DNA from: Haliotis cracherodii
Lineage: Eukaryota
Direction of reading: 5' to 3'
NCBI RefSeq assembly: GCF_022045235.1
Contig: NW_027266302.1
Coordinates: 186,001 to 250,000 of the forward strand
DNA: 64,000 nt
The notes below the pieces were generated by a model, which worked only from the letters and a program-made list of their open reading frames with translations, was not told where the DNA came from and did no database searches. The translations under genes were made by a program, and so were the position numbers. Below are positions 31,011 to 33,500 of the stretch, piece after piece. Position 1 is the first letter of the stretch, and each line of letters starts with the position of its first letter.

Positions 31011-31629
31011 TTCCACTATTCTAGTCAACAGGTTCTGTTACTCAGCCAACCAAGAATTTAAATGTGCTATTTCATCTCACATTATTTCCCAAAAAGAAAT
31101 TCAAAACTTCAAAGATAAAAAATGATAACGAGTCTCTCAAACCATAATTACACATCTTCTTAAACACATGACAACACACATAAACTCAGACAGCTGATGG
31201 AGCTGGCACCTTTTGTTCACTGGATGAGGTAATCCACGTCATAACCAACCCAACACTGTGAGGACTACTCAGATGCAGCAAGCATTACTTGGAATAGGGG
31301 AAAACGAGGAAATATCTCCACTTATTGTCAAACAACTGCATCAAATTGTCTGTACATCAATATTCACCTTGCACCTCAGCCACTTGAATTCAAGCCTCAT
31401 TTGATACAAAGTTTCTGAACAGCTCACCGAAATAACACACATCCCATCTTGCATGTCGTACAAAACCAAAACCATATTTTATCGAAATGAAGTCCAAATT
31501 GTACACGCATGACCAAATCAACAACACAGCTACATTCAAGACAAATCAAATAAATGACTTTAGAAATTGCAAAATATCCAAACAAGTCTTTTCATCTTCA
31601 TATGGTATATATAACACATATAACGTCAG

Positions 31630-31910
31630 AGGGGACACTGGTGGCCCAGTCGTCTAAGGCGACGCGATTCGCTGTGCAGAGTTGCGCCCCTTAGGCATGC
31701 CAGAAACCTTTGATTGTGCGTTCGAATCCCGGTTCACCCCGATTATGTTTCCAGGTTTGTCCGTACCATACCCGTGCTCGTGAGTTTCACCAAAGTGGTA
31801 AACGTCTGAGACCTGCATCACTTTGGGCTTTCATCTCACATTAAGCTGACATGCCGTGATATAACTGGAATACTGTTAAAAGCGGCATTAAACCAAACTC
31901 ACTCACTCAT
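31630..31910 (+). mobile_element. SINE family D (tRNA-Leu/Ser-like head with long A-B spacer, V-domain-like body, (ACTC)n tail)
   Basis: GGTGGCCCAGTCGTCTAAGGCG ... GTTCGAATCCC. Co-linear with 46035 and 50074. Confidence 0.88.
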
Positions 31911-32021
31911 TCACTATAACATCAGAGAATAACCAGATTTGATTATCAAAAAAAAAAGATTCAATTGAGAGTAAAAGGAACAATAGCAGTGAAAAAAATA
32001 TGAATGGATCACTGAAAATCT

Positions 32022-32090
32022 GTGATGATGCCAGGTGTTCACGAAAAGGGTAAGCATGTCCTCCCCTACCCGTAGCTAACAGACACAAGC
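32022..32090 (-). repeat. Dispersed structured repeat motif (copy 2)
   Basis: gatgatgccaggtgttcacgaaaagggtaagcatgtcctcccct is nearly the same as 59893-59937. Confidence 0.6.
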
Positions 32091-32244
32091 AAAATAAAAC
32101 TGGAAATGATGAAGTAAAGAGTTAAATTCAACACTATCCTTCAGGACTTGTTATAATCTTTTTTTATTTTTTACTTATATTGTTTAGCTTTACAATTATG
32201 AATAATTTTTACAAGAAAATATAGAAATTAACCCTGCATATTAA

Positions 32245-32630
32245 TAAGGAAGCGAATATATGGATGTCAACTTCTTTATTATGAAGAACACAACGTTTTG
32301 GAGCATATGCTTACTCCTTCATCAGGGAGGCTAATTAAGGAAGAGAATATATGGATGTCAACTTCTTTATTATGAGGAACACAACGTTTTGGAGCATATG
32401 CTTACTCCTTCATCAGGGAGGCTAATTAAGGAAGAGAATATATGGATGTCAACTTCTTTATTATGAGGAACACAATGTTTCGGAGTATATGCTTACTGCT
32501 TCATCAGGGAGGCTACCACCTGATGAAGGAGTAAGCATATACTCCAAAACGTTGTGTTCCTCATAATAATGAAGTTGACCTCCATATATTCTCTACCTTA
32601 TGTGCATCACTTCTAAATGCCTTTCAAAGA
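32245..32630. mobile_element. Penelope-like (pseudo-LTR) remnant: three 91-bp tandem copies on minus plus one inverted copy on plus, each with a minimal hammerhead motif
   Basis: Units start at 32245, 32336 and 32427; inverted copy 32519-32600 plus a 30-bp tail. CTGATGA-A-GGAGTA-agcata-TRCTCC-(G/A)AAAC(G/A)TT core, AATAAA downstream. TSD cctgcat(a/g)tta at 32233-32243 and 32631-32641. Confidence 0.8.
32517..32556 (+). ncRNA. Minimal type I hammerhead ribozyme motif (G12->A, probably inactive copy)
   Basis: Stem I CAC/GTG, core CTGATGA, 6-bp stem II GGAGTA/TACTCC, AAAA in place of GAAA (GAAA is retained in the minus copy at 32477-32481), palindromic stem III AACGTT, GUU cleavage triplet. Confidence 0.7.
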
Positions 32631-33374
32631 CCTGCATGTTACTGTTATGACCACGTTACCAAAGTGAACTTGGCATGAAACATGGGTAGCCTAAGTATGA
32701 CGTGCATACTACACACCAATACTAGACACACACAATGAACCGAGGGACATAGAAAATATCACAAGAATATGGTCTACATCTTGAATCATATTCAACACCG
32801 GTAGATATGAATCATCATTTGATTGGCTGGATAAAGGTCAGAACTTGCTGACCCAGGGCAGACTTCTTGACCAGTGTGCTTACTAAGTGTTAATATTGGC
32901 AAAATTCCGGTAAATCAAAGCGATGAGTCAGCGACTGGGATCGGTCACTCGAAGCATGAGGAACCGGCCAGAGGGGGAAGCAACCAAGTCATGTGTTTAA
33001 CAGCACACCTAAAAACCAATAAGCAGTTCATGAAAATATCCCCATGGTTCCAGCGGGGTGTCGATACAAAGTAATCACAAACTGTGTTTTATGGAAGGTT
33101 TCTGGCGTGAGAAAAATGACAACAGTGCACTTGGTTGATTGTGTAATATAGAAAATAATATCGATATGTACTCGAAAATGTGGCATATTCGTTTGGGGAA
33201 AAGATTCTTGCCACAGTATCAGGATTTAATCAATATCAAATCTAGAGGGAAACATATGAAACATCTATGAAGGGTGCAATAAAACTGATAAATGTTAGGA
33301 ACTGAATCAATTGCATGTCACAGCAACCACTGTTCAGCTGAGAAATGAAAAATAAGCGTCTGTGGTAGAGGGTT

Positions 33375-33500
33375 GTGTTTGTTTGTTGGTTAATGCCACA
33401 CTCAGCAATATTCCAGCTGTATGATGGCTGTCTGTAAATAATCCAGTCTGAACTAGCCAATCCTGTGATTGATATCATTAGCATCACCCTCGATCTTCAT
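33375..33500 (-). mobile_element. Family B, internally deleted
   Basis: Tail and body match. Flanked by ggtagag direct repeat. Confidence 0.7.

What the first reader, a model, noticed from the sequence alone, without database searches (positions are those of the whole stretch)
32233..32641. Four-hammerhead Penelope-like relic: 3 tandem plus 1 inverted minimal ribozyme units within an 11-bp TSD
Seen: a 91-bp unit repeated three times on minus, facing a head-to-head inverted copy on plus. The consensus CAC-CUGAUGA-A-GGAGUA(agcaua)UACUCC-GAAAC-GUU-GUG can be rebuilt from the copies. It has a loopless palindromic stem III (AACGUU) and a downstream AATAAA. Established: Penelope-like elements carry such minimal type I hammerheads, which cleave as dimers, in their pseudo-LTRs and often insert with an inverted 5' copy. 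Inference: this is a non-coding PLE-derived or retrozyme-like family. Each copy here has a lesion (three have GAAA->AAAA; the one with GAAA has stem II/III changes), so activity would need the consensus or complementation between copies. The ~80-bp arms would also form a long dsRNA hairpin in any host transcript.
Basis: partly seen in the sequence, partly recalled or inferred. Interest (0 to 1): 0.8.

Follow-up and report, generated by a model that had tools for sequence, protein, structure and literature searches.

The report
Decayed Penelope-type hammerhead repeat insertion
This is one worn-out copy of an abundant short mobile repeat that carries a minimal hammerhead ribozyme motif and was inserted the way Penelope-like retrotransposons insert; it is a new example of a known kind of element, not a new kind.

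Summary
Window 32245-32517 is three tandem 91-bp units on the minus strand. They face an inverted 82-nt arm (32519-32600) that ends in a 32-nt tail, all inside a 10-11-bp target duplication with one mismatch.

The repeat belongs to a family of at least about 2,000 copies in this 1.18-Gb genome. It fits the published minimal hammerhead of Penelope-like elements (PLEs).

The family shows every PLE insertion hallmark:
- 5' truncation.
- An inverted 5'-truncated copy.
- Partial tandems.
- A tail at one end only (0 of 59 inverted arms have one).
- Target duplications of 10-16 bp.

All four motifs in the window are dead. Three have G12 changed to A by CpG-type decay. The fourth has helix II and III mismatches. 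The three tandem units also lack the 5' strand of helix I.

Not shown: any link to a PLE gene, RNA expression, or cleavage. Rfam models do not detect the motif. The longest copies (about 440 nt) look like a lone pseudo-LTR with CCAAT and TATA boxes. Insertion 5' ends pile up about 8 nt before the ribozyme.

This scan had already noted the same kind of element elsewhere in this genome.

The parts
32233..32243 (.). Left copy of the target-site duplication (CCTGCATATTA).
   Evidence: 11 nt, one mismatch to 32631-32641.
32245..32335 (-). Tandem unit 1. It holds the 82-nt element 3' unit without tail plus a spacer remnant. Its hammerhead motif lies at 32289-32325 (minus strand), with G12 changed to A and the helix I 5' strand missing.
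32336..32426 (-). Tandem unit 2, 98% identical to unit 1. Its hammerhead motif lies at 32380-32416, with G12 changed to A and the helix I 5' strand missing.
32427..32517 (-). Tandem unit 3, the original inverted arm plus spacer, 91% identical to unit 1. Its hammerhead motif lies at 32471-32507. GAAAC is kept, but helix II has a C-C mismatch and the helix III palindrome is broken (ACAT).
32509..32518 (.). 10-nt spacer between the head-to-head arms. Part of it is repeated in every tandem unit.
32519..32600 (+). Plus arm, the 82-nt element 3' unit. Its hammerhead motif lies at 32520-32556, preceded by CAC (helix I), with G12 changed to A. The AATAAA is mutated to AATAAT.
   Evidence: 91.5% identity over 118 nt to the L051 copy.
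32601..32632 (+). 3' tail, present at this end only.
   Evidence: the tail 25-mer with at most 1 mismatch has 2055 genome hits and 0 in the control; 0 of 59 inverted arms have a tail.
32631..32641 (.). Right copy of the target-site duplication (CCTGCATGTTA). It overlaps the last bases of the tail.

Best explanation
The locus is an old, inactive insertion of a non-autonomous Penelope-type retroelement. Its functional unit is the 3' end of a pseudo-LTR-like RNA: a minimal type I hammerhead, about 47 nt downstream, and a 32-35-nt tail.

Inferred mechanism, after Frangieh 2024 and Craig 2021:
- A PLE reverse transcriptase/GIY-YIG protein supplied in trans nicked both target strands, about 10 bp apart.
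- One cDNA started at the outer initiation site of the RNA and so carries the tail.
- A second cDNA started at the inner site and has no tail.
- Both ran to the 5' end of short templates and were joined head to head through a few filler bases.
- The inverted unit together with its filler was then copied twice more, giving the 91-bp tandem.

The hammerheads were intact in the source RNA. They decayed afterwards, mostly at the two CpG sites of the core.

Shown: the anatomy, the family, the hallmarks and the decay. Inferred: the enzyme, the order of events, and any ribozyme activity.
For: Family size:
- 2439 first-look candidates.
- 2055 tail 25-mers with at most 1 mismatch, against 0 in the reversed control.
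- 243 exact 37-nt hammerheads, against 0 in the control.

The typical copy is an inverted 5'-truncated arm, variable filler, an 82-nt unit and a tail.

Counts on 90 copies picked by the tail alone:
- 56 carry the whole motif. In those, C3 to A9 are kept in 44-50, G12 is G in 48 (A in 5), and A13, A14 and A15.1 are kept in 54-55.
- The commonest changes are C to T and G to A at the two CpGs.
- 32 of 90 have an inverted arm that reaches the unit end, as do 27 of 28 in the best-match set. None of these 59 arms has its own tail.
- Target duplications of 10-16 nt with at most 1 mismatch occur in 35 of 90, and in 26 of 28 of the best-match set, against 72 of 702 in mismatched-flank controls.
- 5' ends are spread along the unit, as expected for truncated cDNAs.

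Independent arrays have different unit lengths and fillers: 91, 91, 78 and 46 nt.

The motif matches the published minimal hammerhead. It has a 6-bp helix II, an unpaired base between A9 and G10.1, a G10.1-C11.1 pair, a palindromic 15.2-16.2 and no helix III loop (PMC4209133, text read).

The genome holds many RVT_1 + C-terminal GIY-YIG ORFs: 894 candidates, with Pfam domains confirmed on 3. Two of the 4 I examined carry a minimal hammerhead 130-200 nt after the stop codon.
Against: - No copy of this family is joined to an ORF. The four longest copies, extended 8 kb upstream, share nothing beyond about 440 nt.
- The element has no similarity at E<=0.05 to 4 PLE ORF loci.
- On contig C1, 0 of 5 PLE ORF loci lie within 100 kb of an exact tail.
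- Rfam reports no hammerhead at E<=10 in the window or in an intact copy, nor at E<=1 in a long copy.
- Helix I has only 3 Watson-Crick pairs.
- No helix II covariation was seen within the family.
- There is no RNA evidence. All 4 runs laid were contigs labelled RNA only by a guess.
- Insertion 5' ends show no clear excess at the predicted cleavage site: 8 of 134 arms at 195-197, against 7 at 175-177 and 6 at 189-191.
Confidence: 0.85

Rival explanations
1. Retrozyme-type rolling circle. The tandem units arose because hammerhead-cut monomers were circularised, and a reverse transcriptase copied the circle several times round.
For: All three units share the same filler, as expected when one joined unit is re-copied. 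The genome has arrays of 46, 78 and 91 nt built from this motif. The model is published for canonical type I hammerheads (PMC7229834, passages read).
Against: - The tandem units lack the helix I 5' strand, so they could not have cut themselves.
- Retrozymes are defined with canonical hammerheads and 150-450-nt units.
- The array ends in an ordinary inverted arm, tail and target duplication, which fits PLE template jumping or in-situ duplication.
- No circular RNA data exist here.
Confidence: 0.08
2. A foldback or MITE-type DNA transposon. The inverted arms would be terminal inverted repeats cut and pasted by a transposase.
For: 82-nt arms, 93-95% complementary. The hairpin folds at -124 kcal/mol, z = -23.
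Against: - The ends are asymmetric: the tail is on one side only, and 0 of 59 inverted arms carry one.
- The centre, not the ends, varies between copies in truncation point and filler.
- Many copies have no inverted arm: 58 of 90.
- Target duplications vary from 10 to 16 nt.
Confidence: 0.02
3. A LINE-dependent SINE with L1-style twin priming.
For: Variable target duplications, 5' truncation and a 5' inversion are also seen with LINEs.
Against: - There is no tRNA gene (0 in 4 long loci) and no Rfam small-RNA head (0 matches at E<=1).
- There is no poly(A) or microsatellite tail.
- Both arms copy the same 3' region from two start sites. Twin priming instead inverts a more 5' segment.
- A tail at one end only is a PLE signature (PMC8557442, PMC11167929).
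Confidence: 0.03
4. A host-exapted hairpin RNA locus (a source of siRNA or miRNA-like RNA), not neutral debris.
For: A very stable 82-bp hairpin. There are weak matches to miRNA precursor models.
Against: - Those matches are far below the gathering scores and follow from any long inverted repeat.
- The arms decay at the family rate (91-95%).
- Thousands of similar loci exist.
- No RNA data are available.
Confidence: 0.02

Closest known systems
Minimal hammerheads (min-HHR) in the pseudo-LTRs of metazoan Penelope-like elements (Cervera and de la Pena 2014, PMC4209133)
   Same: The CUGAUGA and GAAA boxes, an unpaired base after A9, a G10.1-C11.1 pair, a long helix II (6 bp), a short helix I, and no helix III loop with a palindromic 15.2-16.2 pair, which implies action as a dimer. 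The motifs occur massively as single motifs and as pairs on opposite strands 100-700 bp apart.
   Different: Helix I has 3 pairs, not 4-5. This family has no ORF-bearing relative that I could find. Activity is untested.
PLE insertion architecture (Craig et al. 2021, PMC8557442; Frangieh et al. 2024, PMC11167929)
   Same: 5' truncation, partial tandems, an adjacent inverted 5'-truncated copy, and a 30-40-bp tail at one end. The published explanation for the tail is two internal start sites of reverse transcription.
   Different: Those papers describe elements with a reverse transcriptase/endonuclease ORF of 3-4 kb. Here the whole element is at most about 440 nt and non-coding.
Animal non-LTR retrozymes (Cervera and de la Pena 2020, PMC7229834; Li et al. 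2026 preprint, 10.64898/2026.07.22.740005)
   Same: Non-autonomous, hammerhead-bearing, AT-rich and often tandem. They are proposed to derive from PLE pseudo-LTRs and to depend on PLEs.
   Different: Retrozymes carry canonical type I hammerheads with loop-loop contacts and efficient cleavage, have 150-450-nt units, and give proven circular RNAs. None of this is shown here, and the hammerhead here is the minimal type.
tRNA-headed SINE with PLE-type ends in the same window
   Same: A short non-coding repeat in this genome that is inserted with PLE hallmarks.
   Different: There is no sequence similarity to this family (the only hits in the window are at 32247-32634). This family has no tRNA head. 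It has CCAAT and TATA boxes, not a tRNA-type head.

Membership tests
PLE minimal hammerhead (min-HHR) | Catalytic boxes C3-A9 (CUGANGA) and G12-A14 (GAA), plus A15.1-U16.1 and H17. | tested here: met
   Met by the family: 243 exact 37-nt motifs, and G12 is G in 48 of 56 copies. In the window itself 3 of 4 copies have G12 changed to A, and the fourth has other lesions.
PLE minimal hammerhead (min-HHR) | An unpaired nucleotide between A9 and G10.1, a G10.1-C11.1 pair, and a helix II of 6-8 bp. | tested here: met
   A, then GGAGTA/TACTCC (6 bp) with a 6-nt loop. The helix is predicted in the minimum-energy fold.
PLE minimal hammerhead (min-HHR) | No helix III loop or a tiny one, with palindromic 15.2-16.2, so that two copies pair. 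| tested here: met
   ACGT directly follows GAA. The two-strand minimum-energy fold forms the intermolecular AACGUU helix.
PLE minimal hammerhead (min-HHR) | Helix I of 4-5 bp. | tested here: inconclusive
   Only CAC/GUG (3 bp) in the family. In the three tandem units of the window the 5' strand is replaced by filler.
PLE minimal hammerhead (min-HHR) | Compensatory changes among family members. | tested here: not met
   No paired changes in helix II columns among 56 copies. Three unrelated PLE hammerheads in this genome do keep the fold with different helix II sequences, but n = 3.
PLE minimal hammerhead (min-HHR) | Self-cleavage as a dimer or with protein help. | not testable with these tools
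   It needs transcription assays. Published min-HHRs cleave poorly in vitro (PMC4209133), or only with the PLE protein (PMC11167929).
Rfam hammerhead families | A match to a hammerhead covariance model. | tested here: not met
   No hammerhead match at E<=10 in window 31500-33400 or in the intact copy L013, none at the gathering score in the whole window, and none at E<=1 in L123.
Penelope-like element insertion | 5' truncation, partial tandems and an adjacent inverted 5'-truncated copy. | tested here: met
Penelope-like element insertion | A 30-40-bp tail at one end only. | tested here: met
   A 32-35-nt tail. 0 of 59 inverted arms carry one.
Penelope-like element insertion | A reverse transcriptase + GIY-YIG ORF in the element, or in a relative that shares its ends. 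| tested here: not met
   and the C1 cross-check. Only a small part of the 894 PLE candidates was looked at.
Non-LTR retrozyme | A canonical type I hammerhead with loop 1-loop 2 contacts, in 150-450-nt tandem units. | tested here: not met
   The hammerhead is the minimal type. Tandem units are 46-91 nt.
Non-LTR retrozyme | Expression as circular RNA. | not testable with these tools
   Only contigs were available, and their RNA label is a guess.
MITE / foldback DNA transposon | Symmetric terminal inverted repeats and a fixed-length target duplication. | tested here: not met
Pol III SINE | A tRNA, 5S or 7SL head and a LINE-type tail. | tested here: not met

The most novel reading that the evidence does not exclude
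The family is a self-promoting lone pseudo-LTR of about 440 nt. It has repeated CCAAT boxes, a TATA box and an initiator-like TCATTC that would fire about 8 nt upstream of the hammerhead. On this reading, most of its 2,000 or more insertions are promoterless cDNAs of about 120-nt RNAs that begin with the hammerhead. They would be mobilised in trans by a PLE enzyme that shares no sequence with them, so recognition would be by structure. The same layout (repeated upstream motif, TATA, then a minimal hammerhead 26-41 nt later) in two unrelated ORF-bearing PLEs would make 'ribozyme at the very 5' end of the transcript' a general PLE design. This would point to removal of the capped leader as the ribozyme's job.
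Probability: 0.3. Interest if true: 0.5.

Novelty: new member of a known kind. Interest (0 to 1): 0.3.

Why it matters
The locus itself is neutral debris.

The family is a clean natural data set for the poorly understood PLE insertion cycle:
- Thousands of short insertions record two reverse-transcription start sites, through the strict one-sided tail.
- They record head-to-head joining of two cDNAs.
- They record a sharp class of template 5' ends just upstream of the ribozyme.

That last point gives a concrete, testable idea of where PLE pseudo-LTR transcripts start relative to the hammerhead, whose function is still unknown.

For genome annotation, such hairpins and hammerhead-built minisatellites should be labelled as PLE by-products. 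They are not new ribozyme genes or miRNA precursors.

Tried and rejected
Rfam. No hammerhead was found in four searches. The only hits were weak miRNA-precursor matches, which any long inverted repeat causes. I rejected them as evidence of a miRNA.

Search for the autonomous partner.
- Four long copies extended 8 kb upstream gave no shared sequence beyond about 440 nt and no ORF.
- A pair of exact hammerheads 2.1 kb apart in the same orientation (L126) is a 100% identical 2112-bp duplication whose only ORF of 80 aa or more is 91 aa.
- I found PLE ORF loci with a Pfam GIY-YIG search and a protein search and fetched four of them. None resembles the element.
- On C1, 0 of 5 PLE loci lie within 100 kb of an exact tail.
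- This is a small sample of 894 candidates, so the partner is not found, not excluded.

RNA evidence. The 24 listed runs are all contigs, and none is on record as RNA. Laying 4 of them showed only that many contigs of several coded organisms hold the repeat, with no ends and no strand.

Cleavage footprint. I looked for a pile-up of insertion 5' ends at the predicted cut. 8 of 134 arms end there, no more than in other 3-nt windows. There is no evidence either way.

Earlier notes by sequence and by six words returned nothing.

Literature.
- Searches were.
- Among the 12 papers listed of 84, none joins abalone with hammerhead ribozymes.
- Repbase and Dfam were not available, so the family may already be catalogued.
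- Supplements were closed. The supplementary figures of PMC4209133 (invertebrate min-HHR families) and of PMC11167929 (tail mapping) may bear on novelty.
Full report
OBSERVATION.

The repeat finder gives three direct 91-nt copies at 32245-32335, 32336-32426 and 32427-32517. They are 98% and 91% identical to the first. An inverted arm at 32519-32600 is 93-95% complementary to each, with 10 nt between the innermost arms. TRF gives period 91, 3.0 copies, 96% matches and score 500.

After the plus arm come 32 nt that have no inverted counterpart (32601-32632). The whole structure is flanked by CCTGCATATTA and CCTGCATGTTA. This is far beyond chance.

Read on the strand that carries them, the four motifs are as follows.
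- The plus arm reads CAC-CTGATGA-A-GGAGTA-AGCATA-TACTCC-AAAAC-GTT-GTG. G12 has become A.
- Units 1 and 2 read the same, with one G-U pair in helix II and G12 changed to A.
- Unit 3 keeps GAAAC but reads GCAGTA in helix II and ACAT where the family has ACGT.
- In all three tandem units the bases before CTGATGA are ..TAGCCTCC, not ..CAC. Helix I therefore has no 5' strand there.

THE FAMILY.

The genome (G000) has 1.18 Gb in 80 contigs. Earlier notes of this scan call it an abalone, which I did not check.

Copy numbers:
- A DNA search of the whole genome gave 2439 first-look candidates. All 40 that were scored matched, most over query 195-400, that is, one inverted arm plus the plus arm and tail.
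- The tail 25-mer with at most one mismatch occurs 2055 times, against 0 for the reversed control.
- A 16-mer of the tail occurs 1475 times.
- The 37 nt from CTGATGA to GTG, with GAAAC, occur exactly 243 times, against 0 for the control.

To avoid choosing copies by their ribozyme, I took 90 copies anchored only on an exact tail: the first 30 given as loci, plus 60 of the next 62 listed. The two I skipped were already held as L019 and L025.

Of these 90, 56 carry the whole hammerhead stretch at 70% identity or more to a natural copy (L119). In those 56:
- C3 to A9 are kept in 44-50.
- The extra A is kept in 51.
- G10.1 is kept in 46 and C11.1 in 45 (T in 8).
- G12 is kept in 48 (A in 5).
- A13, A14 and A15.1 are kept in 54-55.
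- C15.2 is kept in 44 (T in 8) and G16.2 in 49.
- U16.1 and U17 are kept in 51 and 54.

The most frequent changes sit at the two CpG dinucleotides (C11.1-G12 and C15.2-G16.2). The AAAAC of the window copies is therefore ordinary CpG-type decay. Core positions are not better kept than their neighbours. That is expected if copies decay neutrally after insertion.

INSERTION SIGNATURE.

The typical copy reads: target duplication, inverted arm ending ..TAAGGAAG at the outside, variable filler, plus arm, tail, target duplication.

- Target duplications of 10-16 nt with at most one mismatch were found in 26 of 28 best-match copies and 35 of 90 tail-anchored copies. The control, pairing each copy with another copy's flank, gave 72 of 702. 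Requiring exact repeats of 9 nt or more gave 17 of 90 against 19 of 1779.
- An inverted arm that reaches the unit end is present in 27 of 28 and 32 of 90. None of these 59 arms has its own tail.
- The 5' ends of arms are scattered along the unit, which indicates truncated cDNAs.
- Arrays elsewhere have other unit lengths and fillers: 91 nt in L002, 78 nt in L005/L016, 46 nt in L127. So arrays arise repeatedly.

These are the features listed for PLEs: 5' truncation, partial tandems, an adjacent inverted 5'-truncated copy, and a 30-40-bp tail often at one end only (PMC8557442, passages read). Frangieh et al. showed in vitro that a PLE protein cuts and extends both target strands. They also showed that it starts reverse transcription at two internal sites, and that the tail is the stretch between them (PMC11167929, main text read).

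That explains the strict asymmetry here. One cDNA starts at the outer site and the other at the inner site, and the two meet head to head.

The three window units all contain a remnant of the central spacer. The tandem was therefore made by re-copying an already joined unit plus spacer. This happened either in situ or by repeated template switching. It was not made by three independent jumps (inference).

THE RIBOZYME MOTIF.

It fits the min-HHR of metazoan PLEs point by point (PMC4209133, parts 1-2 of the text read):
- Long helix II.
- Short helix I.
- An unpaired base between positions 9 and 10.1.
- A G10.1-C11.1 pair.
- No helix III loop, with a palindromic 15.2-16.2.

That paper also notes pairs of motifs on opposite strands 100-700 bp apart, and mostly solitary motifs from truncated PLEs.

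Folding of a natural intact copy (L086):
- The hammerhead-compatible monomer fold (helix I plus II) costs -9.2 kcal/mol, against a minimum of -10.1.
- The two-strand minimum forms the intermolecular AACGUU helix.
- A competing 5' hairpin (UUCAUU/GAUGAA) would sequester part of the core.

This is feasibility, not proof. Rfam models give no hammerhead hit in the window, in an intact hairpin copy or in a long copy.

In the window nothing can be active. From my knowledge of hammerhead chemistry, not from a call, G12 is the general base of each active site. Any transcript through the locus would instead fold into the 82-bp hairpin (-124 kcal/mol; 0 of 200 shuffles as stable).

LONGER COPIES AND A POSSIBLE PROMOTER.

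Ten of 134 arms run to the start of my 281-nt reference. Four such copies, extended, share up to about 440 nt. One of them (L123) is bounded by a 10-nt duplication.

Features of the 5' part, all by eye:
- Degenerate repeats of about 45-48 nt containing ATCAGCGC(C/T)AAT, that is, CCAAT boxes.
- TATATATG 34 nt before CTGATGA.
- TCATTC, which resembles an initiator. The motif names are recalled, not from a call.

There is no tRNA gene (0 in 4 loci) and no Rfam match.

Of 134 arm 5' ends (90 plus arms and 44 inverted arms):
- 28 fall in reference positions 151-160, with 21 at 152-156. That is 7-11 nt before CTGATGA and 23-27 nt after the TATA start.
- Only 1 falls in 141-150.
- 10 fall in 131-140.

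This points to a discrete class of short templates that start just upstream of the ribozyme. A transcription start driven by the element's own promoter would explain it (inference). BLAST end points are good to about 2 nt only.

Two ORF-bearing PLEs of this genome (L129 and L130, both RVT_1 + C-terminal GIY-YIG) show the same layout after their stop codons. Each has repeated TGACGTCA motifs, then TATATG, then a minimal hammerhead 26-41 nt later. L129 also has an inverted 5' copy.

In Drosophila virilis Penelope the start site is 46 nt upstream of an intron (PMC2377424, passages read). According to PMC4209133, that intron ends at helix I. The promoter there is reported as TATA-less.

WHAT WAS NOT FOUND.

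- No ORF-bearing relative of this family was found (and the C1 cross-check).
- There is no RNA evidence. The 24 runs offered are all contigs, with RNA only as a guess. The 4 runs I laid show the repeat in many contigs of several coded organisms, and nothing about ends.
- There is no clear excess of insertion 5' ends at the predicted cut: 8 of 134 at 195-197, against 7 at 175-177 and 6 at 189-191. This agrees with Frangieh et al., who found unprocessed RNA to be the main substrate.
- There is no helix II covariation inside the family.

COMPARISON AND VERDICT.

It works like, and by its insertion hallmarks belongs with, non-autonomous derivatives of Penelope-like elements that carry a min-HHR.

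It is not a canonical non-LTR retrozyme. Retrozymes have canonical type I hammerheads, 150-450-nt units and proven circles (PMC7229834, passages). A 2026 preprint argues that retrozymes themselves derive from PLE pseudo-LTRs (10.64898/2026.07.22.740005, abstract and section 14 read). The foldback/MITE and LINE-SINE readings fail on the one-sided tail, the variable centre, and the lack of a Pol III head or an A-tail.

This scan had already noted the same kind of structure elsewhere in this genome. 39 notes hold both words 'hammerhead' and 'Penelope'. One followed-up note reads a 207-bp palindrome as head-to-head truncated Penelope ends.

The finding is real, correctly read in the main, and ordinary for this genome. 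It is a new member of a known kind. The promoter and 5'-end pattern and the 46-nt hammerhead-only array are the parts worth a specialist's look.

Noticed in passing
L127 (G000:C1:67136200-67137800), about positions 141-1540: About 30 head-to-tail units of 46 nt (some 43). Each unit is just the minimal hammerhead, from ATTCAC to GTGTTC, and many are intact. The array ends in the normal unit 3' part and tail. The unit borders share a TTC microhomology. It could be slippage or template switching, or the smallest retrozyme-like array.
   Followed up: partly
L129 (G000:C14:4175200-4179000, minus) and L130 (G000:C2:2868900-2872700): ORF-bearing PLEs (RVT_1 + C-terminal GIY-YIG) with a minimal hammerhead 130-200 nt after the stop codon. 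Each hammerhead is preceded by repeated TGACGTCA motifs and TATATG. L129 starts with an inverted copy of its own 3' region.
   Followed up: partly
L129 and this family, 12-17 nt after the predicted cleavage site: Both read ATAAAGAAG.TGA at a similar distance from the hammerhead, although the elements are otherwise unalignable. It may be chance, or a shared signal.
   Followed up: no
window 32598-32632 and family tails: The tail starts with an ATG (..CCTT-ATG-TGT..). This frame stays open for 11 codons to the element end in the family majority. It might be a vestige of the start of a partner's ORF. In the anole PLE, the reverse-transcription start sites lie inside the ORF start.
   Followed up: no
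window 31800-31922: Another repeat, far more abundant. Summed contig depth is 10^5-10^6 in four runs, against less than 10 for the unique flanks. It borders an ACTC microsatellite at 31897-31915.
   Followed up: no
L126 (G000:C1:69867300-69869950): A 2112-bp direct duplication, 100% identical over the 300 nt compared, that carries a copy of the element. It is either a recent segmental duplication or an assembly artefact.
   Followed up: partly
L058 (G000:C1:31127422-31130446): A copy with two extra partial hammerhead segments of about 47 nt whose borders differ from those in L127. It is another independent small array.
   Followed up: no
L122, L123 (5' parts of long copies): The 5' region of the about 440-nt form is itself built of degenerate 45-48-nt repeats, each with an ATCAGCGC(C/T)AAT motif.
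   Followed up: partly
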